A stretch of 64,000 bases of DNA. Source: Ylistrum balloti (lineage: Eukaryota). Made by a program: the position numbers and the translations under genes. Each line of letters begins with the position of its first letter. Positions within the stretch are counted from its first letter, which is position 1. Under the pieces are notes generated by a model, which did not search any database, had not been told where the DNA came from, and saw nothing but the letters and a program-made list of their open reading frames with translations. Shown in pieces: positions 24,936 through 49,329 of this stretch. Location of the stretch: contig NW_026781913.1 in the NCBI RefSeq assembly GCF_031769215.1, positions 248,001 to 312,000 on the forward strand, written 5' to 3'.

Positions 24936-24964
24936 CCATAACAAATTTACAGTAAAATCAAAAT

Positions 24965-25780: not shown

Positions 25781-27230
25781 GACCAGAGTACAGTGGTGGA
25801 GGTGACCAGTGTTAGGTGGTGGAGGTGACCAGAGTAAGGTGGTGGAGGTGACCAGAGTAAGGTGGTGGAGGTGACAAGTGTAAGGTGGTGGAGGTGACCA
25901 GAGTAAGGTGGTGGAGGTGACCAGAGTAAGGTGGTGGAGGTGACCAGTGTAAGGTGGTGGAGGTGACCACTGTAAGGTGGTGGAGGTGACCAATGTAAGG
26001 TGGTGGAGGTGACCACTGTAAGGTGGTGGAGGTGACCCTGTAAGGTGGTGGAGGTGACCACTGTAAGGTGGTGGAGGTGACCACTGTAAGGTGGTGGAGG
26101 TGACCAGTGTAAGGTGGTGGAGGTGTAAGGTGGTGGAGGTGACCAGTGTAAGGTGGTGGAGGTGACCAATGTAAGGTGGTGGAGGTGACCACTGTAAGGT
26201 GGTGGAGGTGACCAGTGTAAGGTGGTGGAGGTGACCAGAGTAAGGTGGTGGAGGTGACCAGAGTAAGGTGGTGGAGGTGACCAGTGTAAGGTGGTGGAGG
26301 TGACCAGAGTAAGGTGGTGGAGGTGACCAGAGTAAGGTGGTGGAGGTGACAAGTGTAAGGTGGTGGAGGTGACCACTGTAAGGTGGTGGAGGTGACCAAT
26401 GTAAGGTGGTGGAGGTGACCACTGTAAGGTGGTGGAGGTGACCACTGTAAGGTGGTGGAGGTGACCAATGTAAGGTGGTGGAGGTGACCAGTGTAAGGTG
26501 GTGGAGGTGACCAATGTAAGGTGGTGGAGGTGACCAGAGTAAGGTGGTGGAGGTGACCAGTGTTAGGTGGTGGAGGTGACCAGAGTAAGGTGGTGGAGGT
26601 GACCAGAGTAAGGTGGTGGAGGTGACAAGTGTAAGGTGGTGGAGGTGACCACTGTAAGGTGGTGGAGGTGACCAATGTAAGGTGGTGGAGGTGACCAGTG
26701 TAAGGTGGTGGAGGTGACCAATGTAAGGTGGTGGAGGTGACCAGAGTAAGGTGGTGGAGGTGACCAGTGTTAGGTGGTGGAGGTGACCAGAGTAAGGTGG
26801 TGGAGGTGACCAATGTAAGGTGGTGGAGGTGACCACTGTAAGGTGGTGGAGGTGACCACTGTAAGGTGGTGGAGGTGACCACTGTAAGGTGGTGGAGGTG
26901 ACCAGAGTAAGGTGGTGGAGGTGACCAGAGTAAGGTGGTGGAGGTGACCAGAGTAAGGTTGTGGAGGTGACCAGAGTAAGGTGGTGGAAGTGACCAGAGT
27001 AAAGTGGTTGAGGTGACCAGTGTTAGGTGGTGGAGGTGACCAGAGTAAGGTGGTTGAGGTGACCAGTGTAAGGTGGTGGAGGTGACCAGAGTAAGGTGGT
27101 GGAGGTGACCAGTGTAAGGTGGTGGAGGTGACCAGAGTACGGTGATGAGGGTGACCAGTGAATTGTGGTGGAGGTGACCAGAGTAAGGTGGTGGAGGTGA
27201 CCAGAGTAAGGTGGTGGAGGAGACCAGAGT
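25781..27230. repeat. 23-bp G-rich minisatellite (~63 units)
   Basis: Unit GGTGGTGGAGGTGACCA(G/C/A)(A/T)GTAA. Confidence 0.98.
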
Positions 27231-27489
27231 TGATAACCTCTCAAATAACCTCCTTTCTTGTGGGTACATTTGTTACATAATTCTATGTTGAATATTACAA
27301 ACATTCACTCAATGACCAAGTTTTCTGTCCTAAATTGAGAAATTTACAGAAAAATGAGTTATCACTGCATTAGAACGAGGAAATGATATAAAACACCATC
27401 CGCTCTTTTTTTGGAGTGTCGTTTTGGCGTATATGGTCATTATTACACTATGTGTAAAGTAGATTTGATCATTACACTAACTGGTATCC

Positions 27490-28620: not shown

Positions 28621-30100
28621 CAGTGAAACTTCGCTATTAAGATCGCTTTGGGGCCTGGACAAAAGTGGTCTTAATATCGAGGTGGTCTTAATAGTGAGGT
28701 GGATCAGATTGACCGCCAAGAACCGCAACTCTGTTTGAAATAAAGACTATATATATATCATTAAGTAATTTACATGTGTATTATTCAACAATAATAACTT
28801 AAAGTTTGATTAACTGTATATAAAATGTTGAAATTTATTAAATGAATGTTAAACAGGTAAAATTGGTGAATTGACAAAATATTATTTATGTATATATACC
28901 TGTGTTAATCTATATTGTAATATACATGTATATTTATTAATGTTAACAATGAATAAAAGAAAACAATCAACTTTAAGTTCAATAGGAATTTAATGGGTTT
29001 TTTTTCAAATCTTCACATAATTTACAAACATATTCCTTCAGTCAATATATTACACAATCCCCTTCAGTCAATATATTACACAATACAACACATTTGAGGG
29101 GTGTCGCAGTCTGTCTCAACAACAGCAACATCACTAACACTGATACCACCTTTCGCAAAACATTTCACTATAGTCTCCTTCTTTACATCATTGACAACAC
29201 CACTCACAAATCGTATAGCATCCAGAATAGTTATTCCTTTCGCGAAGGTCTCTTCCTGAGGATGATTTCCATCACCTAGACGTGCGATGGTAGAACGGAA
29301 CAGCCTTTTACAGTTTACAACTTTCACTGTCTGAATAATGCCTTGATCCAGAGGCTGAAGAACAGAAGTCGTGTTGACAGGAAAGAAAACAAGCTTGATG
29401 TTGGTCAGCTTCAAACTTGGATGAGAGAGGGCGTTGTCCAAGAATAACAGGATGTGGCGACGAGCGAGCCTCATACGTCTGTCCAAATCTGTTACCCGTT
29501 CCCTGAATAACTGACCGGTCATCCAAGCTTTCTTGTTTGTACGCCAGGTAACAGGAAGTTGAGCAGGCCTAATGTTCTTGAAGCAACGGGGATTTAAGGA
29601 CTTTCCAATGATAAGAGGCTTCTCAAAGTTGCCTTCTAGGTTACAACACAGAACGAATGTGATTCTGTCCTTCTGACTTCTTCCCTTCCTTGCATTCCTC
29701 TCCTCGAACACATAATGACTTGTCAGGTAAGGACCGGAAGAAAAGGCCAGTTTCGTCCATATTATAAATGTCACAAGCATCATATCTACAGATAATGTCT
29801 GGCAGCTTGTCTTTCCATTCTGACACCACATCCGGAGAAACAATAGCACTTCCACCACAGATGTTAGCAAATGAAATTATATGTCTCTCCCGAAATCACT
29901 GCAACCATCCATTAGATGCCTTAAAGTTAGTGTCAGTGATTCAAAGTTCTTGTGCGTAGGTAAGAATTCTCTCCTACAACATTGGTCCAGAGACAGGAAT
30001 GTGCTGTGCACGCATCCGTTGAAACCATTCCCACATGAGTTCATTAAGTTCCTCTGATGATGAATTTTCAATTTATGATTTTTTTTTATAAGACGAGACA
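28621..30100 (-). mobile_element. pogo/Tigger (CENP-B-related DDE) DNA transposon remnant, apparently 5'-truncated
   Basis: TA then CAGTGAAAC terminus at 28619-28629. Frameshifted transposase with HTH (WEWFQRMRAQHIPVSGP..KASNGWL), DIYNMDETGLFF, KDRITFVLCCN, KKAWMT, LLFLDNA.SH, TTSVLQPLDQGII. Other TIR not found. Confidence 0.92.
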
Positions 30101-31158: not shown

Positions 31159-34100
31159 ATGGATGTGAAGAAAGAAATATGTCGGTCGCTGGTAGGGCTT
31201 ACTTGGCTCGCAGTCGGCCTGGCACTTGATATAGGTAATTATAAACACCCGTCACAGAATGCTTTGTCCTCTCTGTATTACTATCGCTGATAGAGATCAA
31301 TAGGAAAGTCCTACATTTTTCTCCTTTTTCGTTGCTATGTTAAACACCCTCACATGCACATACCATAATCTGTACAGGTGTGCGGTTGTACATCTGGCCT
31401 AGTTCTCAGGACAGATCGGTTACAAGACCAGTAACCGCTATGTGTTGTGGAATGGGACACGTTGTTAACTCTAAACATTTCTATATATAACGATATATGT
31501 GATGTATCATTCTGTGGTTTTCGAGTAGCAAGGGTTTCCGCTCGAGTGATGAGGGATCATACAATAACTAACTGCATACTTCTCACCGCGAACAAAAAGT
31601 AAGAGGAAGTGAAAAACCTCCATCTTGTCATGATCAGCCCCCTTATAATCTACCTGTATCTGACGGAGTTGTCTCGATACCAGGGAACCCTGACTCAGTA
31701 CGTATAGATTGTTGCTTGCTTTCTCGAGTAACAAGGGTTTTTTTTTTACCTGAGCTAGTCCCGAGTGACGAGACATTATGCAATAAGTTGACTTACTGCC
31801 TATTTCACACCTTCAACAAACCAAGTTATTCACCAAATCTGCCTCTATACCCTTCATTGTTTTCTGTCTAATTTCCCTGTACCGGAACACTTGACTCAGT
31901 ATTGCTATCAAACGGTCAGAATCCATTGTAAAAGGACGTGATTATTTTCCTACAAAATGACTTGTGGATTTTTAGCCTAGAAATCAGCAAAATGTAATAT
32001 TAATATTTAAACACAAAATACTAGGACAGGAACAAGATGATTTGGAAACATAAAGCCTAGGTAATGAGATAACTCAAGAACCAGTGTTACAAAGCAATAA
32101 AATATTGGGTAAAATCTGGTCTGGGGTCAGTACAGAAAAATTGGAAAACAACTGTAAGTTGTAGATTTTAAAGTGAATAGTTTCAGGTGCATTAGTTAAA
32201 TCAGTCATTTCGTTTAGATTATCATCACAAACATATTGATTATCTCCCCTTTCCTTAAAGAAAGGTTACCACAGCCAACTACACACAGCCCCTTTCGTGG
32301 TCAAGTAATTATGAATGCCCATGAAAGGGACTAGGTGTGTCGTTGACTATGTTACCAATTAATTTATTACCCACACTATGCTGTAACAAATGTCATAAGG
32401 ATTTTTTCCGTGAAGTTGACTTGTGGACAAAAATATTGCACACGGATATATGTGTGAAATATGTAGTAAATGTTCTTGTTCAGTGTACACTGTTTTTCTC
32501 TCTCCTAAGTAATCAGACATCCGAAGATGTCGATAAAAGGGAGATAACTATATAAAATTATGTGCACTCGTGAACGTTTCGTTAATTTTGTCGAGTGTTT
32601 GCATGATTTTACACTAAGAAACCAGAGAGTGTATTTTTTAACATTTATCCTAAAGACTTGCATATTCTCTCTTGATATAGAATTTGTTCAAGAATGTACT
32701 ATACAGTTTCTAAGAGAAAATCATCCAAAATTTGACTTTAAATTTCCTTATATCAGACCAATTTCAGTATGTTTTAATAAGTATTTTCATAGTGTGACCA
32801 AGACGTATTGAAAATGACAAAAACTGGATTTTCAAAGTTTGGCTAAAGGCCTTGTATTTGATGAATTTTATGTCAAGATGGTCCAAACCATACGTAGTCC
32901 ATTAAATTTATGTCCAAAAGTGCTACTAACCATTTCGATCTCTATTTATAATATTGCCAAAACCTATTTCCGAAAGTAGGTTTTGTCGATTGATGTAAAT
33001 ATAAACAAACACATGTTTATTGTTAGAAACTTTTGTTGTGTCTTTGCAACCAACCAACCAGTCAAATATTGTCTTTTATTACAACAAACTAGTCACATAA
33101 TAATATTCTTCAGGTCTTCTGCTGCCCCTTGGTTTCATTCTCGGCCCCATTGGCTGTCAAGCTATCTTGATATAATTTCTGAATTTGCAGATTACATGTC
33201 AGCTTCTTGTACCACTATGGGTGTGACTGTGACGAAATCCAGGATGGTGGAGTCGAGTTCTGCCCTGGTCTACAGTAATGATATGAACTGTGTTTTCACC
33301 GCCAGTGTATCCGACGGTCGCTATAACCTACTTGCTGTTTTTAGGTATGGATTTTCCCGAACAGAACGTTTAATTTGTTCTCTTTGATCTTCTATAATTC
33401 CGTATGTGATTTAGGATGAGTTTTATATAAAAAATAATTTCTGTATGTTTCCCGTATAAACTTGTATTTTGTTATTACTAGGTTTTATTTGTGTCTGCTT
33501 TCATTCGTTGATGTTACGTACCGAGTATTTAATTCTGCAATATTACAATTTCTTTCCAAAGATTGCATCAGCGACATAAATATAGAATATTTTTGAACCG
33601 AAACCATGTGGACAGTAGAGAAAGCCTACAGTAACATACCGTTGTTTATTTGTTCGTTGTAGTTAATTTCCGAGTAATACATGAACTAGTTCGTTGATTT
33701 TGAATTTCTCCAGATTTTTCTGGTCTATAGTTTGTAATCGTTTTCTCTCACAGTCGGTTCGACCTGGAGACGAAGTCTAGTGGTACGTGTCTAGACTATG
33801 TCAATGTTTACGATGGAAATTCAGTGTCGGCTACAGTTCTCAACTCAGAACCTTTGTGTGGTTCCACAATACCTAGCAACCTGGTCTCCACCGGAAGCCA
33901 AATGACCATTGAATTCGTGACGGACTCCAGTGCTGTCCTGATGGGTTTCGCGATCATACTTTCGGAAGTGTATAATGGTAAAATTCTACATTTTTCAGAC
34001 AGCCACCAAAATCATGATGAAAATGATACATTATTGGTACAGTAGGCATAACGTTCATAGAGATGCATGTATCCTGAGGTGTTCCGATTTTAGACAAAAA

Positions 34101-35113
34101 AATGGGAATTCATAACAAAACGGTTTCAATGTTTATCTTGAAAAAAATGGCTGGTGCTCTGAATGGTTTTGTATTGACACATTTCTTTTTCCATTATCCC
34201 CAGGATCCTGCTCCTCAACGGAGTACGCCTGTAGTAATGGCTTCTGTGTGAACTCTGACCTCAGGTGTAATCACTACAAGGAGTGTGGGGACGGGTCTGA
34301 CGAGAACGCGTGCACTAGTAAGTTATTATTGAAATGATAGAACTCCTGGATACATTGGTAACAAATAAGGAGATTAGAGGCCCCACTGAGGTCTTTTTTA
34401 TATTGTGGGTCACTATAACATTTGTGTAAATCAATCTTCACTGAAGATAACCAAAACATCACGTTTACCATACCGGAGATTCCCTGTACTTTTCAGTAAA
34501 CGTGACATATGACACACCGTTGACGATATTTTGCTGAAACCTGAAACATTTCACCTATATACATGCATACATTAAAACGTTTTTCTAAGATAAACAAATC
34601 AAGGTAGATAACTAGCTTAGTAAGTTTTGTCTCTATCAATCAGATATGCTAACCACACACCTTAACAGTTTCCCTCACGTGCTAACTATTGTTTCTCCCC
34701 CTCCAGCTGAAGAGCTTTACGGACCAGGAGCAGGAAACATTGCGCTGATTGTTGGTCTCACTCTTGGTATCCTGGCTCTGTTGGTGCTGGTGGCAGTCAT
34801 TGGCATTTTCATTTATAGACAATACAGATGGCGCCTTTTCCTCAAAGACCCGTTCCCGGAAATGAAGAAATGGAACGCGACTAGCAACTACCCGGTGACC
34901 CAAAAATACTACAAACAAGGTTTTACCAACACTGGCTATCAGAGCATCGAGGTGCGCTCTCCGACTTCTCCGACTTCCCAACCCTACAAAGATTTCGAGG
35001 TAGAGGAGGATGAATTATCTAGCACAAAAAAGACCGACTCACTTACCTCAAAACCCACAGAATCAAAGGAAAAAGTTTTGTTTAAAAATGAGCCAGGTAC
35101 ATCGAAGGTGTGA
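31159..35113 (+). CDS. Gene A: signal peptide-CUB-LDLa-TM-cytoplasmic tail protein (324 aa; MIG-13/LRP12/LDLRAD2-like architecture)
   Basis: Exons 31159-31234 (MDVKKEICRSLVGLTWLAVGLALDI), 33191-33344, 33754-33977 (CUB: CLDYVNVYDG..LCGSTIP..STGSQMTIEFVTD..GF), 34204-34317 (LDLa: CSSTEYACSNGFCVNSDLRCNHYKECGDGSDENAC), 34707-35113 (TM IALIVGLTLGILALLVLVAVIGIFIY + tail). All GT-AG, phases 1/2/1/1 consistent, 975 nt total. Confidence 0.92.
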
Positions 35114-38083
35114 GGGAAGTCCTGTGGAATTATTGAGTATGTAGAGGTTGTAACACTGTTGATCAACCTCATTTCATTAGTTTTGTTAACATCAGTAGGT
35201 CCTTTATAATATCATACTATATTTGTTACTGTGTCAATCTGTTAATGGTACATGTAATAAGAAATTATAATGTTATATCCATGTTAATATGGAACCTTAT
35301 TTTCGCATTCAAATCCGTCCAATAGTTCATGTATACTCGTGTAACCTACAGGTCCTGTTTTAATTCGTTATATTGGCACGGCTCAGTATCGACACCTGTC
35401 CTTGATGGCATTCTGATTAAACCAAATACAGGAAAAATACAAAATTTATTTAATGATGGAGCTAGTGCACCTCCGATCTAGATTTTGACAATTCTTTCGA
35501 TCGATTTCGATTTTCCTTAATCGCTTCCTAAATTTAAAATTTTAAGATGTACGATGCAGTCTAAGTTATCATTAGGCTCTTCATTATCTGTGTGATCATT
35601 TATCGTTTTTTAACATTCTTTCTTTGTGTTTTGTCAGTCCATTCATAGTCTAGAATAGATATTGTCACTTGTCTTCTGAAGTGTCCTTGATATTTAGGAT
35701 TGATGTACATTGTCAAGGCCAACTTAACTCAAACTATAACATCCGGGTACCAGATGAATTTATGCAGAACTTTCTTGTACAATATATTGTCGGAGACTCT
35801 AAGATTTCTTAGCTCTTCCCCGCCACACTAAGTGTGTAACAAGAGGTTAGCTAAGAATAAAAACAAGAATAATCAAAGACTACAATGTACCTAGGACATT
35901 CCTGGAATACCTTTCTCCAAATTTGTCTTCAGGTGTAATGGATGTGTCCTATATGAATAACAATGAATATGCAGTACATTAAGATTTAAATGATTCCCCC
36001 GACTAAAATACGAGAGTTTAATGCATCAGATATATCGTTTCTATATTTAATTTTTTATATATTGGCATGTTGTGTATTTCGCAGGCGAAATACTTTTTAT
36101 ATCATAAGTTTTTATTAACAAATAAATTAACTATTAAATGCTGTATTCATATTGTTGTGATAATTTATAGAGTCCATTACAGGATATCTAAAAACAGGAG
36201 AGAGAATCTCTTTTAAAGATTTTAAATTCCGTCTGAGCTATGCCAGAAGATGACAATTGTACACATAGTTTGGATAACGTACGTCAGGATTTTCACAGGT
36301 CATACACAAGAGGGACTTAAACATGTCCAACAGTACTGGATAATGACGGTCGGAATGTTAGCTTTATGGACCAGGAAAACAGATTTTATTGTAATAAGTA
36401 TAGAATAATAGCTGACGAATTTCAATTTGTTAAAAAAGAAGACGACACGCAGTGAAATGATTTTCAGCATTTGACTTTATGGCATTGCATTCACCAAGTC
36501 TTACACTTTCACAGAATAAGCAACTTATCCAGGGGTTCTTTCATTTTTTGATTTTTTTTTTTTTTTCTGAAATATTTAATTTCAAAGCTATTCATTTAGT
36601 AAAAGTATATTATCGATGATTGATTCCATTCTAGTTAAAGGGGGATAACTCTTACAGTTTTGCATATACGATATGAAATCGTGACGGGGTCGTCTTTATC
36701 AATGCTACATCGGAATGTCTCTAGGTTAATCTACACGTTACATTTTCTTCTGAGATTTTCCGTCATTGACAAAACTTTTCTCTCGATCATTAGTCAAGCA
36801 AGACCCAATAAGCGAAATCAAAATTCCACAGAATAGCCAATGATGGCGTGAAAGAAGTCTTTTTTGGGAAAAGTTATAGAAGCCACATTATTTATTGAAC
36901 TTTCATCCATTCACAACACAAATAACAAATAAAAAGTATTGTAGTACAAATTAATGATAAAAATTTCATACATGTATATGTAACATTTCAGCACACCTGA
37001 ACCGACGTCTGGAGGAGTTGATAAATACTTTTTATTACTTCCCTTCCCATATACTGTATAAAACCTCAATTTCAGCAACAGCCTAGTACATGGGACAGCA
37101 TATGACTTTAATCTTATTTACAATGACTAAGTTTCGAATTTCTGTCTCAGGTGAAGGTCTATGCCATGGCATACCTAGCTTACAAGGAGGCAGAGCAAAT
37201 GAGGTAGACCTGTTATAATCTAGAATATGGATATAGGAAAAAAGAAGACATTGTTGTTTCATATAATACTTCATTTTGTACAAAAATGGACAAAGATTTA
37301 TATTTTAAAATTTATGATTTACATGCAATGATATAGATACTAAATAACACTTATATCACAGAACGCATTATATGTTGAGACTACATAATAATCTAACTCA
37401 CTCTATGTACACTAACAAATATTATAATTGTAATGATGACTTGAGATCGATTCAGCAATACTAACAAACGAGGAGAGACAATGACGCGGGAACGACGTCA
37501 ACAATCAAAACGTACAAGAGAGTGATGACGTCAGAAACGTCAGATGACAGATAAGAAAGCGAGTTAATGACGTCAACAAGGACAGACATGTAGGAATGAC
37601 GTTAAATTAGAGTGCTGTAGGTAATAATGTACAATTTCACGTCAGCAATGATGAAGATCAGGGGAATCAAACATTTCACAACAGAGAACAATGGTAAGCA
37701 GCAGAAATTAAATGACCTCAAGAACATAATATTATATGGAACAAATTGAAAGGGTTTATATACAGTATCACCAAACATCCGTACGATGGTCCAATCAGGA
37801 CTCAGCTTCATACAGAAAATAATTAATGTAATAGATCTACAATTTGTATCAATATGATACACGTGTATTTCCTATTCCTAGTGACCCCAGAAATCCTACA
37901 ATAAATGTTTAGAATCATCACTGAGCTGCTAATCATAATATGTGACATGTTGAATCTTCTTACGTGTTGGCAAAACATTTGAATTAAATCTCTACGTCAA
38001 ATATATAACTATTAATCCATATTCAGGACAAACCGGTTTTCACAAATCCAAGACACAGGTAAAAATTCTGTTTCTATGGTTAC

Positions 38084-38211
38084 GTGGGTCATGTGATATA
38101 AATATCTAACGATGTTCTCTAAGATGGCCACCATCCCCTGACAGGAAGTGGGTCATGTGATATAAATATCTAACGATGTTCTCTAAGATGGCCACCATCC
38201 CCTGACAGGAA
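38084..38211. repeat. Perfect 64-bp tandem duplication spanning the stop codon of gene B
   Basis: 38084-38147 is identical to 38148-38211. Confidence 0.95.
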
Positions 38212-41200
38212 GTTAAGCCAACCATTGGAAAGGGCCGTACTGTCCGTATCCGGGTCTGACGTAATAGAGGGCGTGGTTTTCTTGGGAGTTTCATTTTCCA
38301 CTGGGCTGATGGCATTCTTCTTCTTCCATGGAGAACCCGTGACTGTAAAATAAAAACTAAAATATAATAACATTTTGACCAGCCTCTATGTGACTTCGGT
38401 TCTACTGTCGGCTGTGTTACACAATGTGATTATAAATCGGCACTTCATTTGATTAAGTTGTGGTAGAAATATTTCTTAGTTTCATGCTCCTATTAAAGAA
38501 AAACTCTTTTTGCAACTTATCATAAATGCGCGTAGCTTAGCGCATTCGTGACAAGTTAGCAAAGAGCTTATAATTAATTCATTAAATACGCTGCAGAAAC
38601 AAAAATATCACATTAATAAATGAAATTGATAATTCAGCGCAGAATTATTTCATACTTATCACTACGCATGACAGTTTACATGACATGACGTAACGTCATT
38701 CGCGCCATTTCAAGTCATTCAAAATTCCAAACGGAATCTATAGTGTATTTAAAATAACAGTCTCTCCTCGTAAATGCGTTATTTATTCATTGTTTGTGTA
38801 TATTGTAAGATATTGAATTCTTTTTATGTTGTAGTTTTTTTCCATCACCGAATGACAGTAATCAAAACATCAGATGAATGTGTAAACAGCTATTCCATTC
38901 ATACAAAAAAGTAGTTCCAACAGACCCGCAAGATGGCATATCAACATCGAATCCGACAATCATTATCAAGTTGGCGGAGCTAGATTTTTTTCGATCGATC
39001 TATCAAAAGAAAAAATCGTGCAAACAACGAAAAATTAATTATAGATAAACGAACCTCCTCCTCCGCCACCTCCACCTCCTCCGAACACTGTGAATGGGGG
39101 AGCGCCACCTCCGGGCGAGCTGTCCCCGGGGGAGCCATTTTCATTCTCCAACAGATGTCCTTTCCAAGCAGCCCCACCTGTGGGACCTCCGCCTATTTGA
39201 AATACAAAGATACAATGCAAACTATGGCAATACTACAAAAACACATCCCACAATCATTTACTTCAAAGTTCATGGAAATATGAACATTTTAATGAATAGA
39301 CAGAGACAAGACGAAAACGCCAGGACTGTATATCGAATTAAGTTGCTTGTCTAAATGTCAAGTAGGTTGATATCAAATAAGTTTATCGTCCAGTTTCATT
39401 CAATCCTAAATCTGAACTCAAAGTTATATCTGTTTACATGAAGTATACATAGACATTATTTGTGTTTTTAATCTGACTTACTTCCGCCCCCACAGTAACA
39501 AGCACCTGCCCCACCGCCGGGACCCCCAGTTGGCGAACACACCGGACAGCACGTAGCGAAGCACGTCCCACATGAAATACAGCACGGACAGTTCCTTAGT
39601 CTCGCGCATCTCCAAGGCAACCATCCAGGTCTACAGCAGCACCAGTAGAGGACACTGAGGCCGACTATGAGACCAACAACGATGTAGAGGGGAGTAAAAT
39701 CTGGGGGTGGAACAGGGGGCGCTGGGGTCGTCGTTGTTGGCTTTGGCTTTTTGGGTTCTGTAATCACATACAAGTGCGATGTATACATGTTCCCCCACAC
39801 GTGATATATAACAATTTTTATTACATAACACGCCGTATTTGATCTATATGAACTTTAATCAAATACTTTCTGATATTTCCATGAAAAAAACAGAGCTCAC
39901 TGTGACATCAAAAAGAACGTCACATGAAAATCCCCAGAAGACGTTGACTTCATCGTTATAATGTCATCTGGCTGCGGTAGGGGCAAGGAAGTTTGTTTTG
40001 TGTTACTAAGAGAGAATTAAAACAATTAAAACAAGATGTCTTAGTAACACATACCGGAATGTATTCAGTAAGGACTTCTAAACCATAGTTTGGCTAAACG
40101 TTATATGAAGTTCGTAAAAAAAGAAACCCTGCTGCGGCAAGTTTGTTTTAATATTTTTATGACATAAGTATGTAATAAAAGATATATATATTCACCATTA
40201 TCACTATACCACGAGAGAGAATGATATATCTGTTATCATGTTAACTGGTCATGTGATAAAGAAAATCACATACAAAGCGGTCACATGATGTCACAAAATT
40301 AGAAAAAAAAGTTAACGTCATTTAAATAACCAATCATAGTATCAATCTGTCCACAAAGTTTTCCTTAAGCGTTAACAGGATTTAATTTTTTTACGTTTCA
40401 TGTTGGTATAAAGAAAACCCATCGTGTAAACTGAATAAATACTATGATACTTTTATATCAAAGCTTATAATTAATTTCTTAGATAGGAGTCAAAAACAAA
40501 AATAAAACATGGCTGTATAAATTTGATAATTTACTGAGGGATTATTTTACTACAAATCACTACGCATAACAGCTGGCGTGACATGACGTGACGTCATTGA
40601 CAGCTAAATCGCGCCATTAACAGTCATTTAAAACTCTTTCATAAGTGGTCCCGTCACATTCCAAAATGAAATATGACAAAGTGTAAAATAACATTTTTCC
40701 CTGATAAATCTGTTATTTATTCATCATTTGTTGTTTATTAACATTGTAAACTATATGGATACTTTATTATGTTGTGGTCCGTTGGTGACGGCGATCCACA
40801 CACCCAGAGAATATAAACAGATAGTCTAATCATAAAAATGAAGATCAAATAGGCTCGCCGCAAGGTGGCGTGTTGCCATTGATTCCTCCAATCATTATCA
40901 TGTAGGTACATACAATAATGGTAGAGATGTCGTTATAATCACGTGTACATGTAAGTATATACAATAATGGTAGAGATGCTATAATTACGTGTACATGTAG
41001 ATATATACAATAATGGTAGAGATGTTATAATCACGTGTACATGTAGTTAATGAATACATTTACAACATTACCAACATGTTATCGTTTGATAATACCGGAG
41101 ACAAATAATTGTTATTAACACGCGTTTACAACAGCTGAGTTAAGACTTCAAAGATGACGTTTAAATTACATGACGTCATGCGCATCGTAACGTCAAGATA

Positions 41201-44200
41201 TTCGGATTATTATTTTTATTTTTTTATTTTTTTTTATTTATATTTATACTTGTCTGGTAATGATAATATGACTAACATATGTAACCGCGGTGGATTCACG
41301 TGCACATCGCATGTTATGAATACACACACGTATACCAATAAATGACAGCCATAACCATTATAATTACGATAATAAAAAAGGACGGGTTCAGATCTGTGTG
41401 AGGGCCAAGAGGAGGGACAGGGGAGGCTGTGGATGTAGTAACAGGCTTTTTGGTTTCTGTAATTATAAAATTGTGTCTTTTACCATGTGTACATATGTAT
41501 ATGTATTGTTACAGACTATATATACTTAAACGATAAAAATCAAAATCAGTCAGGCGCTGGTTGAACGAGATATAAGAGTGAACGGTTTGTTTTGTATTAG
41601 TTACATGTAAGGTTTACGGCAGACCACATATACTGATGCTTTCATTTTGGATTATATTCGGAAATATATATGTTATAGAGAGAACATCATTTCTGATGTA
41701 AATGGTTGGCTAAGTGATCAAATCGTGCTGCAGGAATAAATTTAGTAAATGTTTTCGGTAAAGAGTATTCTTCATAAAAAAACGTCATCTGCCATTAAAT
41801 CTAGTTTTAAGAGAGGATTACATGTATAATGACAACAGTTTAAGTTCCATGTCGTAAACAATAGTTTAAGTTCCATGTCGTAAACAATAATTTAAATTCC
41901 ATGTCGTAAACAATAGTTTAATTTCCATGTCGTAAAAAATAGCTGAACTTCTATGTCGTAAACAATAGTTTAACTTCCATGTCGTAAACACTAGTTTAAT
42001 TTCTATGTCGTAAACAATAGCTTAACTTCCATGTCGTAAACAATAGCTTAACTTCCATGTCGTAAAACTACTACTACAAGTCCATTTGAGAGTGGACCCA
42101 TTTGTCTTTTGCAGGCCATAAGAAGAGTAGATGACTTGTCGAGATTAAGACGTCCTCGCGTAACAAACCTTAAGTCTCGTCTTCTCGCGGCGAGAAGAAG
42201 AAATAACGATAATTTAGGTTTTCGGTTTTGATTCTCTTCTTTTCGCTGCACAAATCAGGCAGTTTAGTGCCAAGCGACAATGTATCGCAACTAGTCAACT
42301 CACCAACACTGTCACACCGACCAGATCGTTTGCGATAGCTGGAGTACATACATTTAATGAATAATAGTTTACCTACGAGACGTCAGTTACGTACTGACAA
42401 TGAGTGAAACAGCATCGAGGCGAACATTTTTCTGACATATGTGTTTTAGAAGAATGATGACTTTTACGTTTGATCGGTTCAGGATTTGGTGGATCTACTG
42501 TGTCAGTATAACGGACATCCACTATCAAAGACATCTAATGTTCTCCATTTCTGAGGGAGCATCGTCTCGCCTGATGTCATCGTCGGAAACCCTCGAGACT
42601 CTTCACGACTTCGTGGATTTTCGTCTTTTGTAGGAACTTAATTATCACAAATAAATATCGTTCAGACATGTGAGCCTCGATTTCACTCCGGTCCCAACTG
42701 CGAACACGTGTAAGATGAACTAGACAGAAGAATTCGCAATTTTCCTGGCATCCCTACCCAACCATCTTAATACACTCTCCTAGTTATCCAATGATCTCGT
42801 GACAGAATGGAATTACCTTATAAATTATATAGAACTTAGGTTTAGAACTGTTTCAACTGTTCAATGTGGACAAACTCAATAGAAGGCTGATTTCAAAATT
42901 AGTTTTATTTATCTTACTACACGCGAAGTATTATTTTGTTTCTAATCTGAATAAAAATAAGGCGTTTTCCAAAATATTATATATTGATCATTAAAAAGCA
43001 ACCTTTTTAATCAACCTGTCTATTCAACTTTGAGTTGCTTGATTATTTCAGTGTATATACAGTGGATGTGACCGAGAATATACATGTGCGCGCGTGTGAT
43101 CAGATTACGGTCTACAACTAAACAATGATTGGTATATCTCCTGAACAATGATTATACTTCACTGGCGAGTTAGGGAACACTTTCTGTTACTATCTATTAA
43201 CGCCAATGAGGATTTGTTGATGTAGATAAAATAAGTACTTACTTCCACAATTTCCGGGATACTTCTTGCTAACATCCGATGAATCTTTCGGGAAGAACTC
43301 GGTGAGACAGTTCTTGGAGTACCAGTAATCACATCGAAGAGAATCATCTAGACATCGCTTACTATCGTTACACATCATCACCACGCCTTCGACCGTTTCA
43401 TTACATGCTGAAAAAAGTAGAATCAACATAAACAGTTTGAAATGAATTAAAATATGATATGATCATACATTATTATCATCTCTTCGACGAGGAGTGATTT
43501 TGTCGATACAATGATTAAATATTTAGCTTCACACATCACTTTTTTTGTATCATTTTCTCCACAAATATATTTCGAAACATCTAAGTTGCTTTTACCGTAA
43601 CCAAAGGACGTAACGTCGAGCTTGAAGAAGACCTCAGGATAATCGAAATCGTCCACAGGCGTCGTTGCTTTTGGATCAAGCGTAGCGGAGGTGTCAGGTG
43701 GTAGTGTTGTCCCGTTGCCAAGGGCGGGGTTTCGGTAGTCAAGGTAGAAATAGAGAGTGATGTACTCCCCCTCCCACTCATAGGATGGCGCTACAGTGTC
43801 CACCCCACAGAGCGTGAAGAACTGGGTAGCGGCTGCCTTGTCTTTACCATTATACATCGTCACGTAGGCCTTCCCACAATCCTTCGCGGTCGTCGATCCG
43901 AGCCTCTTTTTCACCTTTGGGTCATGGATTAGAAATTCCCGCCAATAGATACCCATGTAGCGCTTTTCTGGTGGGAACACTCCTGGGGTCGCCGGCATAC
44001 CGCGCACGATCACGGTACATTCCAACAGCTGTCCTTTGAGCTGTTCCGCGATGTTGACCTTAGGTTTGGACTTCTCATTAAAAACTAGGTCCCTGTCAAA
44101 CTCAAGATATGCTCCAAAGTCAGGACCAAGCACGTGACCACAAGACTCCGTCACAAAATCTGAAGAAAATTCAAATACCCAATTTTCAACATTTTTTCAC

Positions 44201-44865
44201 ACATCTGTCCTCTTGGTTTCAGAAACAAAAAGTTAAAGATGTTTGCTGATTTTCCTACGAATATAAGAATTTTACAATCAAGCTATGCCATAGCCAAGAG
44301 TCTTAAGTCACATTGAAGTTAGATATACCACTCTCCTTGATGGTAATCATGTTATGCAAATCATTTAAACTTCAATTATTGAACTCGTTTGATAAAATCT
44401 ATAGTACTATTGGCGTGACACTCTTACAGAAATTTCTGTTTTTAAAGTTGGGCTTCACTGCCCATTACAACCCTGGTAGTTCCCGTAAGTAATAACACGT
44501 ATGTCATGACGCCGTACATAACACAAGTTGTTTCCTAAGTTTAACAGGGTAAATAAGCAGAAGACACTGACATTTTCGGCAAAATGATGTTATTGTGTAT
44601 GTAATGTTGCTTAAATTAGTATTTAAGAAGATTTGAAGTGCGGAGATTTTTTTTTCATTTCAAAACACGCGATGGATTTGATGAGTGAAAATATTCTTTG
44701 GAATTTTGGATCAGTCAAAACGCTATCGATTTGAGTTGACTTCAATCTCCAGTGTTGTCTGAACTTCTACAAAATGAAATGAAATGAATGTACTACATTA
44801 TATTTAGCATCCATAGATCCCTAGACTTTCCCAACATAGTTCAGTAAAATACTCACATCTTTCAT
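38170..44865 (-). CDS. Gene B: divergent CUB-LDLa-stalk-TM protein with Cys-rich and Gly-rich cytoplasmic tail (466 aa model)
   Basis: Exons 44865-44857 (MKD), 44534-44459 (signal-like; weak donor GTGAAG), 44159-43596 (CUB-like), 43407-43243 (6-Cys LDLa-like), 39757-39482 (Pro/Thr stalk, TM YIVVGLIVGLSVLYW, 14 Cys), 39192-39055 (Gly-rich), 38342-38170. Phases consistent, 1401 nt total. The first two exons are less certain. Confidence 0.85.
38560..38965. repeat. Dispersed repeat, copy 1 (diverged copy at ~40455-40900)
   Basis: Collinear shared blocks GCTTATAATTAATT, ACTACGCAT..TGACATGACGT.ACGTCATT, ATTTATTCAT, TTATGTTGT, TAAACAG, CCGCAAG.TGGC, CAATCATTATC. Confidence 0.7.
40455..40900. repeat. 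Dispersed repeat, copy 2
   Basis: Same blocks and orientation as 38560-38965. Confidence 0.7.
40900..41045. repeat. ~48-bp tandem repeat x3
   Basis: ACATGTA..TACAATAATGGTAGAGATG..TATAATCACGTGT repeated three times. Confidence 0.85.
41314..41456 (-). CDS. Duplicated stalk+TM exon of gene B ending in a stop (candidate alternative terminal exon)
   Basis: Acceptor ATTACAG|AAACCAAAAAGCC versus ATTACAG|AACCCAAAAAGCC for the main exon. Same phase; open to TAA: KTKKPVTTSTASPVPPLGPHTDLNPSFFIIVIIMVMAVIYWYTCVYS*. Confidence 0.65.
41833..42066. repeat. 26-bp minisatellite (~9 units) in a gene B intron
   Basis: Unit ATAGTTTAAGTTCCATGTCGTAAACA. Confidence 0.93.
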
Positions 44866-45590
44866 TTCTGCCGTCACTTAATGACACCTGGAGTAGAAAG
44901 AAAAGAAAATAAGAGAGAAGGAACTCCATGTTGCTTAATAGTCCTGATCCTGTATCTGTAGAACTCTATAGTGACGTCCAGCTCGTTGTTTTTGTGTATA
45001 AAACACCTGAGTTTGGTATATATGTAGGGGGTCAAATAGGAGGGGTTTGTCAGTTTTATATAGCTTCAGTTTAAACACGTGCAATTTACCAATACGTGCC
45101 AGTACAATTGTACAATTATCCAAAAATTATCATTAACGAGTTTATTTTTCGAAACTTCTTTTCTTGAGCTTCATTCATTTTCGAATTTATTTGATTTTTC
45201 TCCTTGTGATCCCCAAATGACAGACCCCATTTCTAGATTCACAACATCACGCCGCCGTAGCGAGGCGATTCGCCTGCCCCTATCAGGAATGTGCAATAAA
45301 AGGAAATGGCACGGTATAGGAGAGTTCGACACTAGTGCATATTCTTGGGAGCGTCCACTATGTGTATACAATACTAGAAACTACTAACAGTGGTGTTGTG
45401 AATATTGTTATACATCTTTCAATATGTATAGTCTTCTTAAAATACCACAAACGGCGATACAGCTTGTTTGAAGACAACAGTGACACATTTAAATGAAGGA
45501 TACCGTAAACAATCCTGCTGCTATGTCGCCGCGATCTGTTATAACCGCTGCCTTTACCCAATCCTACATTGTGTGTGGGCGGTTACTCAC

Positions 45591-46500
45591 CTTTCATAGA
45601 GTTATTCTGTTCGTGTGACTTGTAATAAAGTATATTTTGTAGAATTTCCACTTGGTTTTAGCTTTTTCTGCGATGAAATTGCCGAATTAGTGTCTTCTTG
45701 TCCATTAGTGTGAAGTTTTAATGAAATAACGATGACATATGAATTTTTCGTTGTTTGTAGTTATTTACAATAAACATTTTAGTCACACCTGACATCAAGC
45801 TTTTTTTTAATAGTCGGTATTTCCTGTTTTTGTTATCCTTAGCAACAAGTGACGAAGATTTAAAGAGCTGTGATACAGATGGAAACGTAAATATCGATCC
45901 GTTCGTACTGGGTATTGTAAACTAAACACATATTTCGCTGATGACTGACTTAAAAGGAAGATTTTCCTCGTGTACTTACTAAGAGAAAACATTTTCTATG
46001 TTATGCTCAAAATATGAGCTGTACGGAACCAGATTATTCATGCTCGTGTTAGATACAGAATATCAACAGGCATACATATAATAATTACTTTATACAATCT
46101 GTCGCTCAATGTAAAATTTTACATTTATCTAGAGTGTCCAACCATTTAATATGGCCGTATTTGTTATAAAATGGCATAACGTCAGTAGTTGTTTTGTTAA
46201 CAAGCACGTTACCATTGTTACTCATGTAAACGACAATCAGTAAGGACTGAGGGGACAGTAACTCACTCACGTCCACTACTCTGGGTGATATTTTCCAGTC
46301 TCATTTTGATTCCAGGAACAAATCGGAATGTAATGATAAAACACACAGATACATTTATATCTTCTTTAGATATATTTACATGTGTTTGCGAGAATGTTTG
46401 CTCTCCTCCAACCCCTTCGTCGCGGTTCAGGACCAGCCTGATGCGAGGTATTTGTCTGTCAACTTCTTTGGATCATGATACATACAAGTGCACAATCACT
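45591..46500 (-). other. Probable 5' UTR exons of gene B
   Basis: Strong minus-strand donors AG|GTGAGT at 45591 and AC|GTGAGT at 46271; acceptor CCAG at 44888 leads into the ATG exon. Confidence 0.45.
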
Positions 46501-46949
46501 TTAAAGATAATTTGTCTAACAAGTTAGTAGATTGTTAGTTACCAGTTTATCTGGTATATATTTCTTTTGCTTGTAGTGTTTGGAACATACATTTAGTAAA
46601 TAATAAATGGTTTATACAGCCAATAACCAACAAAGGACGTTCATTATTACCATCATGTCATTTATGCACACGAATGAAACGTGTACATGAATCAAAATTA
46701 AAGCCTGTACAGGGGTGTAGGGCACAATATATGATAGATCTTCGTCCTAGCCATAAAGGCGGTCACATAGTTAGTCCAAATCTCGCGTGACTTTGCATTA
46801 CCGCGCATCACACCTACTCTCAAAAGACGCAGTTTTTAATAACAAAGTATGTACAGTCACATCGTTCTTGGTTTATACTCAGTCTTATCTGTTGACAAAG
46901 ATAGTAGTATAGTTTATCAATCCAAAGGTACGCACATCGTAATCAAGAT

Positions 46950-49329
46950 ATGACGGTCACTTTTCTCGTCCGACTGGCCTGGATTGTCTGGTCATTCGGA
47001 TTGGTCGCCGGACACAAACACGCCAAACATTGGAAATCAGGTAGCTATGTTACGAAACAAAGCATGTTTGATATGAATTATATAAAAGGACAAATACGAG
47101 ATTCTATAGACGACTTGGAAATCACTTCATAAACAGGAAATCTTCATAACAAAGTAAAGTGTTCTGAAATATTTCGTCAATTGTGTTGAAAGGGAATTCA
47201 GTCTACAGACATTACCAGTGACAAACATCAAGCTTGTCAATAATAACATAATCATTTTTCGAATCACCGTATAGAGAAAAACCACTGCTAGAGCTTAACT
47301 CGTGGCAAATCCTCAGGAAGGTTTGTTTGGTCAGAGTCATATGAAACCGTCTTCACGAATAATGAGGCCACTGGTGGACGTTTTTATAGTGTCCTCACAC
47401 TGAAATGCCATAACATTTATATAGCAGAATCGTTGTGTGCTTCACAAAATAGAAGCTTCATTTGAAAATGGGATTTTCCACTATTTTTTTTACACTAGTC
47501 TGCCGAATATAGTGAAGGTGTGGCGACATACAATTAAACATCTTCATCGTTGTCCATGTTGCCAGTTTCAGTGTCTGTCTTGTGACCTCAAATTCATGCA
47601 AATCTTTTTGAAAAAAGGCAAATTAACTGTTAAGATTTGAAGCTGAACTATTGTTATTGGAGCACGACTTTGTCCGCTGGAGCTGGATTATTGATATTAT
47701 CTATGTCATGTCTCATTGAAAGTTCGGCCTAAATTGTTCCTGTGTCATCGAGAAAAGAAACTTTGTGATACTGACAAAATTAACGTTAATCTTACGTTGT
47801 TACAATTTAAATATGCTATTATGCATGGATCACGCAGTCAGAGTCTGTTGACAGTTTACATGCAATCTTTTACGACTAACAGACGAGCTCAAACCATAAT
47901 ACGTCCCGACTTTTGATTGGCATATTTGAAAGAAGCTTGAACGTCAGCCACCCCCTGGTATTTGAGACTTTGTATTATATGTAGCATGTATTATAAACCT
48001 CTCTAAATCTTACAGAGTTCCTGGAGGACCACTGCAGTCGTAAGATCAAACTACACTTGTTTCAGAGATTTGAATTGACACGTGATTTGTTCTACAAACA
48101 TGGATGGCACTGTGACGTCACACTGGAGGCACCAGCCCATCACGTGGTGGCGATTGCGTTTCAGAAGTTTGATATCGGTCGCTCGAAATCGGTAGTCTGT
48201 GAAGACGCCTTACGAATATATGACGGTAAGTAGAGTGTAGACAATAAGAAATTCAGTTCTGGTATGATTTTGGTGTGAAGGTTGAATGCTAGTCATGCTT
48301 TTAACTCTCCATATAGCGTCAATAATTGGTACCGGAAATTACATTTTTCGTGTCGGAGTACGTCTCCATCTTTATAGTTACACTTAATAACATTTTATGT
48401 GTTTCTAAATGTGTACTGTTTGTTTTCAGGTGATAGTATAAGATCGTCAACAAACAAAGGCCTTTGTGGTCAGATGATACCGCAACATGTCATGTCCAGT
48501 AGTAACACACTGACCCTCAAATTCAAAAGCCGGTACATCACGACTGGTGCAGGTTTCACTATAGACGTCACAACACTTGGAGGTACAGTTCTGGGATTGA
48601 ACAACAGGGTTCCGGGAACTGTGGTCAGGAAATCACTGTCCGTTCTTTTCTGATGTTAGAAAATGATACAAAACCGTCAGGGGTTTAATCAGAATGACGA
48701 ATGATATAATCGACAAATGAGTTGTAATTCTAGTTGTAGTTTTTCTTATAACATGACGTTGACTTTAATTTCTTCAAAATCATTCTTTTCGTTGAGGAAG
48801 CTGAATCCGTACCTCGGAAATTAGTGAAACACTGGGCGATGAAGGAATTTTTCAGGCCAAGTTACGATTTTAAGCTGTTATCTGTTCCAGTTGCTGAAAA
48901 CGATAGTGATTCCAATCCAGATTCCAGTTCATGTCCAGACAACAGTTTCCGGTGCATGGAAACGTTTTGTCTTGACCGAACTTTGGTATGTGACGGTGTA
49001 CCAAACTGCCGCGACAAATCAGACGAGTCTGCAAACAGCGCAGGCTGTGCAGGTAAGCTATCGCCTAGCAATGCTCTATATCAGTTTTTGTTAATTGTGT
49101 TCAACACAACAGATTAACATAAGGAGCTGTTTGATGTGCCGAGGTATTTACTTTTTATTTTTCAGGGTTGGGAGCTAGTTGGATCGACTTGAGCGTCGGA
49201 GCGAGAGTAGCCATATTTTTTGTCGTTTCCTTTCTCCTTATCGGAATGTGTGTAATGATTATATACTGTTTGTGTTGTCCAGCGTCAGCCAAACCTGTGG
49301 CCGCTTATCTATCCTACAAAAAGATTTAG
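46950..49329 (+). CDS. Gene C: signal peptide-CUB-LDLa-TM protein with short tail (259 aa)
   Basis: Exons 46950-47040 (MTVTFLVRLAWIVWSFGLVAG...), 48016-48225 (EFLEDHC..CDVTL..FQKFDI..CEDALRIYD), 48430-48582 (LCGQMIP..SSSNTLTLKFKS..GAGFTI), 48891-49052 (LDLa CPDNSFRCMETFCLDRTLVCDGVPNCRDKSDE), 49166-49329 (TM VAIFFVVSFLLIGMCVMIIY, CLCC, ends SYKKI*). All phase 1, 780 nt total. Confidence 0.92.

What the first reader, a model, noticed from the sequence alone, without database searches (positions are those of the whole stretch)
31159..49329. Cluster of three anciently diverged CUB-LDLa-TM receptors with completely different cytoplasmic tails
Seen: three genes (+,-,+) within 18 kb share the layout signal exon, phase-1 intron, D/N/E-aromatic-x3-C start (DYMSASC, NFVTESC, EFLEDHC), one CUB, one LDLa exon, one TM. 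The tails are unrelated: ~85 aa Ser/Thr/acidic (A), Cys- then Gly-rich (B), ~20 aa (C). Established: CUB+LDLa+TM ectodomains occur in MIG-13/LRP12, NETO/SOL-2 and LEV-10, which act as guidance receptors or auxiliary subunits of ligand-gated ion channels. Inference: this may be a lineage-specific set of co-receptors or auxiliary subunits using a common ectodomain with modular signalling tails.
Basis: partly seen in the sequence, partly recalled or inferred. Interest (0 to 1): 0.7.

Follow-up and report, generated by a model that had tools for sequence, protein, structure and literature searches.

The report
Conserved scallop cluster of CUB-LDLa receptors
Three neighbouring scallop genes each encode a small single-pass membrane protein with one CUB and one LDL-receptor-type module outside the cell and a different tail inside; the trio has stayed together in the same order in scallops, oysters and mussels, but what it does is untested.

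Summary
Genes A (+, 31159-35113), B (-, 38170-44929) and C (+, 46950-49329) each encode signal peptide, one CUB, one LDLa(-like) module, one TM helix and a tail of their own. All introns between modules are phase 1.

- **Gene A:** its five exons reproduce, letter for letter, a 324-aa RefSeq protein of Ylistrum balloti named "neuropilin and tolloid-like protein 2". Its family, with a conserved tail, occurs in bivalves and gastropods.
- **Gene B:** Pfam misses both modules. The CUB is backed by a predicted fold that matches only CUB structures, and by a 95.8% profile match to the A family. The LDLa call stays weak.
- **Correction to B:** Its ~170-aa tail ends in a motif, W..LS.DG.HLRE(H/Q)R, conserved across pteriomorph bivalves.
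- **Synteny:** the order and orientation C<-, ->B, <-A are conserved in Pecten, Argopecten, Crassostrea and Mytilus, and the A-B part in Pinctada. The trio was not seen within 10 kb of A in Mactra, Sinanodonta, Haliotis or Lottia.
- **Selection:** dN/dS is 0.02-0.09.

Not shown: that the three genes are each other's closest paralogs, that they are expressed (no RNA run was found), or that they work as NETO-like auxiliary subunits. This is a new variant of a known kind, of moderate interest.

The parts
31159..31234 (+). Gene A exon 1: start codon and signal peptide, phase-1 donor
   Evidence: exact substring of P0055 residues 1-25
33191..33344 (+). Gene A exon 2: N-terminal part of the CUB, ends in a phase-2 donor
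   Evidence: Pfam CUB at residues 52-144 of P0055
33754..33977 (+). Gene A exon 3: C-terminal part of the CUB
34204..34317 (+). Gene A exon 4: LDLa module
   Evidence: Pfam PF00057 2.1e-10
34707..35113 (+). Gene A exon 5: stalk, TM helix, ~100-aa tail with a conserved juxtamembrane block and a Y-P-V-T-x-K-Y-Y motif; ends T-S-K-V, then stop
   Evidence: tail profile finds mollusc orthologues
44857..44929 (-). Gene B exon 1: start codon and signal peptide
   Evidence: matches the N-terminus of P0001 and P0007
43596..44159 (-). Gene B exon 2: divergent CUB with inserted loops, in a single exon
   Evidence: No Pfam hit. AF2 model pLDDT 67; all top Foldseek matches are CUB domains. hhalign to the A family 95.8%. 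dN/dS 0.024-0.049
43243..43407 (-). Gene B exon 3: six-Cys LDLa-like module with insertions
   Evidence: No Pfam hit. The Cys residues align with A's LDLa. Module-only hhalign 35% and 26%. AF2 model unusable
41314..41456 (-). Duplicate of B's stalk+TM exon inside intron 3, ending in a stop just after the TM helix; candidate alternative last exon or decaying copy
39482..39757 (-). Gene B exon 4: Thr/Pro stalk, TM helix, Cys-rich juxtamembrane region
   Evidence: dN/dS 0.026 against Argopecten in this frame; no indel in a second individual
39055..39192 (-). Gene B exon 5: tail segment (P-T-G-G-A-A-W motif, Gly-rich)
   Evidence: the motif is conserved in alignment A5
38170..38342 (-). Gene B exon 6: tail end with the conserved C-terminus W..FLSGDGGHLREHR, then stop
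44930..46949 (.). 2.0-kb head-to-head spacer between B and C; candidate shared promoter region
   Evidence: The same divergent arrangement has 0.8-4.2 kb spacers in four other bivalves. A shared promoter is an inference.
46950..47040 (+). Gene C exon 1: start codon and signal peptide
48016..48225 (+). Gene C exon 2: N-terminal half of the CUB
   Evidence: Pfam CUB 1.6e-4; 81% identical to Pecten, 48% to oyster, 41% to mussel
48430..48582 (+). Gene C exon 3: C-terminal half of the CUB
   Evidence: Pfam CUB 1e-4
48891..49052 (+). Gene C exon 4: acidic linker and LDLa module
   Evidence: Pfam PF00057 2.5e-8
49166..49329 (+). Gene C exon 5: TM helix and ~20-aa tail (Cys cluster, ends Y-K-K-I), then stop

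Best explanation
What is shown: this is a conserved three-gene locus. Each gene encodes a small type-I membrane protein with signal peptide, one CUB, one LDLa (degenerate in B), a short stalk and one TM helix. Each family has its own conserved cytoplasmic tail.
- A (324 aa) belongs to a mollusc-wide family that RefSeq names NETO-like.
- B (about 460 aa) belongs to a family so far seen only in pteriomorph bivalves. It has a divergent CUB, a palmitoylation-type Cys cluster after the TM helix and an invariant C-terminal motif.
- C (259 aa) has an almost tail-less form.

What is inferred:
- The three arose by ancient duplication next to A, before scallops, oysters and mussels split.
- The ectodomains bind an extracellular partner, and the conserved TM and juxtamembrane segments and tails give each protein a different intracellular coupling.
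- The most likely role, by analogy with NETO/SOL-2, LEV-10 and MIG-13, is accessory subunit or co-receptor of another membrane protein. I put about 35-40% on that role.
- B and C may share a promoter region.
For: Gene models:
- A is identical to P0055 exon by exon.
- B matches the Argopecten protein P0007 over six exons.
- C matches annotated neighbours of 258 and 259 aa.

Domains:
- Pfam finds CUB and LDLa in A and C.
- B's CUB is supported by Foldseek, where all top matches are CUB domains (neuropilin, PCPE-1, NETO2, TSG-6, C1r; target TM-score up to 0.76).
- It is also supported by marginal Pfam CUB hits in 5 of 9 orthologues and by hhalign of the B family against the A family (95.8%, E 7.8e-9, collinear from signal peptide to TM helix).
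- The Atlas language-model search on B's Mytilus orthologue P0009 gives CUB+LDLa clusters as nearest, LDLRAD2 first.

Synteny and selection:
- Synteny with the same orientation in Pecten, Argopecten, Crassostrea and Mytilus, plus the A-B pair in Pinctada.
- Purifying selection, dN/dS 0.02-0.09.
- SNPs in a second individual are synonymous in B exons 4 and 6.

Conservation of the tails:
- A's TM helix and tail are conserved from scallop to abalone and limpet.
- B's tail motifs are invariant in nine orthologues.

Link to NETO: the Pinctada A orthologue aligns in one stretch with NETO2's CUB2-LDLa-TM (residues 57-225 against 203-367, E 1.3e-10).
Against: - No expression data: the only run that holds the locus is DNA.
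- Common descent of the three is not shown. In this genome A's CUB exon finds CUB exons on other contigs at 41-42% identity, and neither B nor C at E<=0.1. C's exons match the B profile poorly. Intron positions inside the CUB differ.
- B's LDLa is unsupported by Pfam, and its fold model is unusable.
- The PDZ-type end of A (S-x-V) is present only in scallops.
- The trio was not found within 10 kb of A in Mactra, Sinanodonta, Haliotis or Lottia.
- The proposed function is analogy only.
Confidence: 0.6

Rival explanations
1. The three genes are not a duplicated set. They are separate products of exon shuffling of phase-1 CUB and LDLa modules that happen to lie together. The block persists only because bivalve gene order changes slowly.
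For: - A's CUB exon is closer to CUB exons on contigs C449, C189 and C414 than to B or C.
- C's N-terminal CUB exon has no paralogue hit in this genome at E<0.06.
- CUB intron positions and phases differ between A, B and C.
- C exons score only 0.3-30% against the B profile.
- Phase-1 flanked modules are the classic substrate of exon shuffling (established knowledge).
Against: - Identical module order in all three.
- A shared start immediately after the signal exon (aromatic, hydrophobic, three residues, Cys).
- Full-length collinear B-A profile match at 95.8%, and C-A matches at 91-97%.
- Adjacency and orientation kept across scallop, oyster and mussel.
- BLAST closeness to slowly evolving CUBs elsewhere does not measure recency of duplication.
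Confidence: 0.2
2. They are ligand-uptake or scavenger-type receptors, in the manner of LDL-receptor-family or cubilin-like cargo binding, rather than accessory subunits of channels or receptors.
For: - CUB and LDLa are the ligand-binding modules of cubilin and LRP2, which are the best-scoring solved relatives of the A orthologue.
- The nearest Atlas cluster for B's Mytilus orthologue is LDLRAD2, an LDL-receptor class A protein.
- A's tail holds conserved tyrosine-containing motifs.
Against: - A single CUB plus a single LDLa is a very small binding surface.
- The LDLa calcium-cage acidic positions are partly replaced in A and C and largely replaced in B (read from the sequences; the cage positions are from established knowledge).
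- No NPxY motif appears in any tail.
- The strongly conserved TM and juxtamembrane segments fit in-membrane partnership better than simple anchoring.
Confidence: 0.15
3. Gene A is simply the scallop NETO orthologue, as its RefSeq name says, and the locus is an already described family.
For: - RefSeq names for A orthologues in Ylistrum, Haliotis and Mytilus are NETO1 or NETO2.
- There is a collinear match to NETO2's CUB2-LDLa-TM.
Against: - A and all its orthologues have one CUB, not two.
- Cubilin, PCPE-1, neuropilin-1 and C1r CUBs score as well as or better than NETO2.
- Other sources name the same family ST14, LRP or enteropeptidase-like, so the names are best-hit labels.
- The A tail profile found no NETO among its 30 hits.
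Confidence: 0.05

Closest known systems
NETO1/NETO2, Drosophila Neto, C. elegans SOL-2 (auxiliary subunits of glutamate receptors)
   Same: Type-I membrane proteins with CUB followed by LDLa just outside the membrane. The A orthologue aligns in one stretch with NETO2's CUB2-LDLa-TM. The tails differ between paralogues and isoforms and carry PDZ-type ends (PMC9083331); A ends S-K-V in scallops.
   Different: NETO proteins have two CUB domains (PMC9083331); A, B and C have one. There is no tail similarity. No functional data exist here.
MIG-13 (C. elegans) and its mammalian relative LRP12
   Same: MIG-13 is a single-pass protein with one CUB and one LDL-receptor repeat, both extracellular (PMC5560785). 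That is the same minimal architecture.
   Different: Sequence relationship not tested (no MIG-13 sequence by reference). LRP12 has several CUB and LDLa modules. A separate gene of that multi-module kind lies on contig C189 of this genome.
LDLRAD2 (vertebrates) and ~320-330-aa arthropod 'CUB domain-containing' proteins
   Same: Small proteins carrying LDLa and CUB. They are the nearest clusters to B's Mytilus orthologue P0009 in the language-model search (0.93, 190 of 256 features).
   Different: This is a lead only: no alignment, no E-value and no tail comparison. LDLRAD2's own function is unsettled (10.64898/2026.04.14.718607 reports expression only).
LEV-10 (C. elegans acetylcholine-receptor clustering protein)
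   Same: Type-I protein with CUB and LDLa that acts through its ectodomain (PMC9083331).
   Different: Five CUB domains, against one here.

Membership tests
NETO / SOL-2 | Two extracellular CUB domains | tested here: not met
   Pfam finds one CUB (residues 52-144) in the full A protein P0055. Orthologues of 286-324 aa leave no room for a second. B and C also have one.
NETO / SOL-2 | One LDLa between the last CUB and the TM helix, type-I topology | tested here: met
   collinear match to NETO2 residues 203-367.
NETO / SOL-2 | Binds and modulates kainate- or AMPA-type glutamate receptors | not testable with these tools
   Needs co-expression and electrophysiology.
NETO / SOL-2 | C-terminal PDZ-binding motif | tested here: inconclusive
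   A ends S-K-V (window) and S-N-V (Pecten), but S-N-C in oyster and S-I-A in mussel.
MIG-13 | Single CUB + single LDLa + single TM helix | tested here: met
   Architecture of A and C by Pfam. Definition from PMC5560785.
MIG-13 | Sequence orthology to nematode MIG-13 | not tested
LDLRAD2 | Sequence-level relationship beyond shared modules | not tested
   Only the feature-based Atlas hit.
CUB domain (PF00431), gene B | Pfam gathering score | tested here: not met
   No hit for the window's exon. Best orthologue scores 21.1 bits against a cut-off of 21.4. 5 of 9 orthologues hit at E<=1, best 5.9e-4.
CUB domain (PF00431), gene B | CUB beta-sandwich fold with the four conserved Cys | tested here: met
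   AF2 pLDDT 67.3, pTM 0.68. All 40 best Foldseek matches are CUB domains or CUB-containing proteins, E down to 3e-5. The four Cys are invariant in the family.
LDLa module (PF00057), gene B | Pfam match, six-Cys pattern and acidic calcium cage | tested here: inconclusive
   No Pfam hit. All six Cys align with A's LDLa in the full-length profile match. Module-only hhalign gives 35% and 26%. Inserts follow Cys4 and Cys5, and the S-D-E is replaced by S-D-V/T. AF2 pLDDT 49.6, so not searched.
LEV-10 | Five CUB domains | tested here: not met
   One CUB per gene.

The most novel reading that the evidence does not exclude
The three proteins are subunits or alternative partners of one membrane complex, for example a set of single-CUB accessory proteins for a bivalve ligand-gated channel. 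On this reading they are kept as a co-regulated head-to-head / tail-to-tail locus for more than 400 million years, and B defines a new family with its own signalling motif at the extreme C-terminus.
Probability: 0.12. Interest if true: 0.65.

Novelty: new variant of a known kind. Interest (0 to 1): 0.42.

Why it matters
CUB-LDLa membrane proteins are the best-known class of accessory subunits for ligand-gated ion channels (NETO, SOL-2, LEV-10) and of guidance co-receptors (MIG-13). All well-studied examples come from vertebrates, flies and worms. This locus gives molluscs a defined, conserved set of three minimal single-CUB versions. One of them (B) is invisible to Pfam and carries an unexplained invariant C-terminal motif. 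The conserved gene order offers a testable hint of joint regulation or joint function. It also corrects best-hit names such as "NETO2" for a protein that lacks a defining NETO feature.

Tried and rejected
The junctions could not be tested with reads.
- B-exon profile against PDB sequences: only a chance chaperonin hit, E 0.38.
- Atlas search with B's tail alone: no usable hit.
- AF2 on B's LDLa-like exon: pLDDT 49.6, so it was not used for a fold search.
- Searching the Lottia and Haliotis genomes through locus handles: not in the collection.
- Look-up of the Acanthaster hit P0058: not on record.
- A shared C-(I/L)-D-x-x-L-x-C-D core in the three LDLa modules looked like a joint signature. Other LDLa modules of this genome include one similar case, and A of this species deviates, so I dropped it as evidence.
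- A tree of CUB halves was not built. C's CUB is split over two exons, and half-domains of about 50 aa would not resolve.
- Joined step left out: spliced models were not joined. All searches with window sequence were done exon by exon, by reference. Full-length analyses used proteins that the searches returned (P0055 for A, P0007 and other orthologues for B). No full-length C protein was available, so C's range beyond Pteriomorphia is unknown.
Full report
**1. What is in the sequence**

ORF listing, frame translations and splice-site enumeration give three compact genes.

| Gene | Strand | Exon | Coordinates |
|---|---|---|---|
| A | + | 1 | 31159-31234 |
| A | + | 2 | 33191-33344 |
| A | + | 3 | 33754-33977 |
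| A | + | 4 | 34204-34317 |
| A | + | 5 | 34707-35113 |
| C | + | 1 | 46950-47040 |
| C | + | 2 | 48016-48225 |
| C | + | 3 | 48430-48582 |
| C | + | 4 | 48891-49052 |
| C | + | 5 | 49166-49329 |
| B | - | 1 | 44929-44857 |
| B | - | 2 | 44159-43596 |
| B | - | 3 | 43407-43243 |
| B | - | 4 | 39757-39482 |
| B | - | 5 | 39192-39055 |
| B | - | 6 | 38342-38170 |

- Every intron between modules is phase 1.
- The intron inside the CUB is phase 2 in A, phase 1 at a different place in C, and absent in B.
- The five exon translations of A and its four split codons reproduce P0055 exactly. P0055 is a 324-aa RefSeq protein named "neuropilin and tolloid-like protein 2 [Ylistrum balloti]". The window therefore comes from that scallop or something indistinguishable from it, and A's model agrees with an independent annotation.
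- C sums to 259 aa, as in the annotated neighbours in Pecten (258 aa) and Argopecten (259 aa).
They were found by laying the Argopecten irradians orthologue P0007 (457 aa) on the window.
- Spliced models were not joined. Window sequence was searched exon by exon, by reference.

**2. Domains**

Pfam finds CUB and LDLa in A and C, exon by exon and in P0055. It finds nothing in B, neither in the window nor in the Pecten orthologue.

B's 187-aa exon 2 is nevertheless a CUB:
- One orthologue misses the Pfam cut-off by 0.3 bits, and 5 of 9 orthologues give marginal CUB hits.
- The B-family profile matches the A-family profile at 95.8% (E 7.8e-9), collinearly from signal peptide through CUB and LDLa to the TM helix.
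- An AlphaFold2 model (pLDDT 67, pTM 0.68) matches only CUB domains among solved structures: neuropilin-1 and -2, PCPE-1, NETO2, TSG-6 and C1r, with target TM-score up to 0.76.
- The language-model Atlas puts B's Mytilus orthologue P0009 next to CUB+LDLa clusters, LDLRAD2 first.
- The extra length comes from loops, one of them a variable Thr/Pro-rich insert.

B's exon 3 is weaker evidence for an LDLa:
- It has six invariant Cys that align one to one with A's LDLa in the full-length profile match.
- It has inserts after Cys4 and Cys5 and has lost part of the acidic cage.
- Taken alone it reaches only 35% (against A) and 26% (against C) in hhalign.
- Its fold model is unusable.
- I call it LDLa-like, probably a degenerate LDLa.

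**3. Tails**

The three tails share nothing with each other, but each is conserved within its own family.

- **A:** the TM helix, a basic/aromatic juxtamembrane block and a Y-P-V-T-x-K-Y-Y motif are kept from scallop to oyster and mussel, and on to unionids, a mactrid clam, abalone and limpets. The S-x-V end is found in scallops only.
- **B:** a W-C-C-(W/C)-R-P-G-(Y/W)-L-x-W-R juxtamembrane block, an S-P-T-G-A-A-A-W motif, a variable middle and the C-terminus W..LS.DG.HLRE(H/Q)R are conserved; the D-G-x-H-L-R core and the terminal R are invariant in nine orthologues. No Pfam family and no Atlas look-alike covers this tail.
- **C:** about 20 residues, with a Cys cluster at the membrane edge.

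**4. Conservation and selection**

*B family.* B's exon 2 is single-copy in this 648-Mb genome. Its relatives in the word-indexed protein database are all pteriomorph bivalves: Pecten, Argopecten, Pinctada, Saccostrea, Crassostrea, Magallana, Mytilus and Tegillarca.

*The trio.* Fetching the DNA around B orthologues shows the same arrangement each time. A 218-259-aa CUB+LDLa gene lies head to head with B, and a 314-321-aa CUB+LDLa gene lies tail to tail with it. This holds in Pecten maximus, Argopecten irradians, Crassostrea virginica and Mytilus californianus.

*Orthology of the flanking genes.* tblastn of the window's exons confirms that these neighbours are the orthologues of C and A:
- C exon 2 is 41-81% identical across the four species.
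- A's tail exon is 37-72% identical where it lies inside the fetched stretch (Pecten, oyster, mussel).

*Other bivalves.*
- In Pinctada, A is followed by convergent B.
- In Tegillarca, B is triplicated in tandem, and A and C are not within 10 kb.

*Where the trio is absent.* Around A orthologues of Mactra, Sinanodonta, Haliotis and Lottia, no B or C lies within 10 kb. In Lottia the downstream neighbour of A is a P450 gene. A transporter gene of the SBF family lies upstream of A in both Lottia and Pinctada. That fits B and C having been added next to an older A, though loss in Lottia is equally possible.

*Selection.*
- Against Pecten and Argopecten, dN/dS is 0.02-0.09 with dS near 1.1.
- A second individual (run X1, DNA) carries only synonymous SNPs in B exons 4 and 6, and no indel in exon 4.

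**5. Are the three genes a duplicated set?**

*For:*
- The same module order.
- The same start right after the signal exon (aromatic, hydrophobic, three residues, Cys).
- Collinear profile matches: B-A at 95.8%, C exons against A at 91-97%.
- Long-kept adjacency.

*Against or neutral:*
- A's CUB exon finds CUB exons on other contigs (41-42% identity), and neither B nor C at E<=0.1.
- C's exon 2 has no paralogue hit in this genome at E<0.06.
- C against B is weak.
- CUB intron positions differ.
- Any CUB would match A's profile at similar levels.

I take ancient local duplication as the more likely history, at about 60-65%. It is inferred, not shown.

**6. Function**

Nothing here tests function.

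- *Known proteins of this architecture.* They act through their ectodomains as accessory or clustering subunits of ligand-gated channels (NETO, Neto, SOL-2, LEV-10; PMC9083331) or in cell migration (MIG-13; PMC5560785).
- *What favours an accessory role.* A's TM and juxtamembrane segment is conserved across molluscs, and so is B's within bivalves. That argues for a specific partner in or at the membrane rather than a mere anchor. I therefore favour an accessory-subunit or co-receptor role (about 35-40%) over cargo uptake (about 15%).
- *The RefSeq name.* "NETO2" for A is a best-hit label. A lacks the second CUB that defines NETO. Other sources call the same family ST14, LRP or enteropeptidase-like.
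- *LRP3/10/12.* A separate multi-module LDLa/CUB gene of that kind lies on contig C189.

**7. Verdict**

The novelty lies in three points:
- B is a Pfam-invisible CUB/LDLa-like family with a conserved tail.
- The trio's order and orientation are conserved across pteriomorph orders, which by general knowledge separated in the early Palaeozoic.
- A is a single-CUB, mollusc-wide family distinct from NETO proper.

Interest is moderate.

Noticed in passing
window 41314-41456 (-): A duplicate of B's stalk+TM exon sits in intron 3. It has a good acceptor and a stop right after the TM helix. Copies exist at the same place in Pecten (51% identical) and Argopecten (42%), but not in oyster. In a second individual all three SNPs in it change the protein, one to an earlier stop, whereas the SNPs in B exons 4 and 6 are silent. 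It looks relaxed: a minor isoform or a decaying exon copy.
   Followed up: partly
window 38084-38211: A perfect 64-bp tandem duplication covers B's last 13 codons, its stop codon and the start of the 3' UTR. The protein is unchanged, because the first copy in reading direction holds the stop. Depth in run X1 is raised there, so copy number may vary, or the repeat may be collapsed or expanded in assembly.
   Followed up: partly
L001:14470-14772 (Pecten maximus): The annotated Pecten B protein P0001 (358 aa) leaves the TM reading frame inside the Thr/Pro stalk of exon 4 and ends in another frame without a TM helix. The TM/Cys-rich frame is open and 84% identical to the window's. This is probably a one- or two-base indel in that assembly, or a real frameshift, so P0001 is not a reliable model of the family.
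   Followed up: partly
L015 (Tegillarca granosa), L020 and P0006 (Pinctada imbricata), P0008/P0015 (Saccostrea echinata): B is tandemly duplicated in several lineages: three copies within 28 kb in Tegillarca, and two adjacent loci in Saccostrea. In Pinctada the 612-aa protein is a partial copy fused to a full copy.
   Followed up: partly
L017 (Lottia gigantea) and L020 (Pinctada imbricata): A gene of the SBF transporter family lies just upstream of the A orthologue, on the opposite strand, in both a limpet and a pearl oyster. This is an older piece of synteny than the trio itself.
   Followed up: no
window 29076-29870 (-): A 264-aa open frame resembling a DDE transposase of the pogo/Tigger kind (judged from the sequence, not searched) lies 1.3 kb upstream of gene A.
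   Followed up: no
window 20500-23500 and 24000-27300: Long minisatellite arrays read as repetitive open frames on both strands. GC skew is strongly shifted at 26-28 kb.
   Followed up: no
Judged from motifs in the ORF list only.
   Followed up: no
L023 = G000:C189:818000-827999 (-): A separate gene with alternating canonical LDLa and CUB exons (LRP3/10/12-like layout). Another multi-CUB gene with LDLa lies on C414 (L022, L024).
   Followed up: partly
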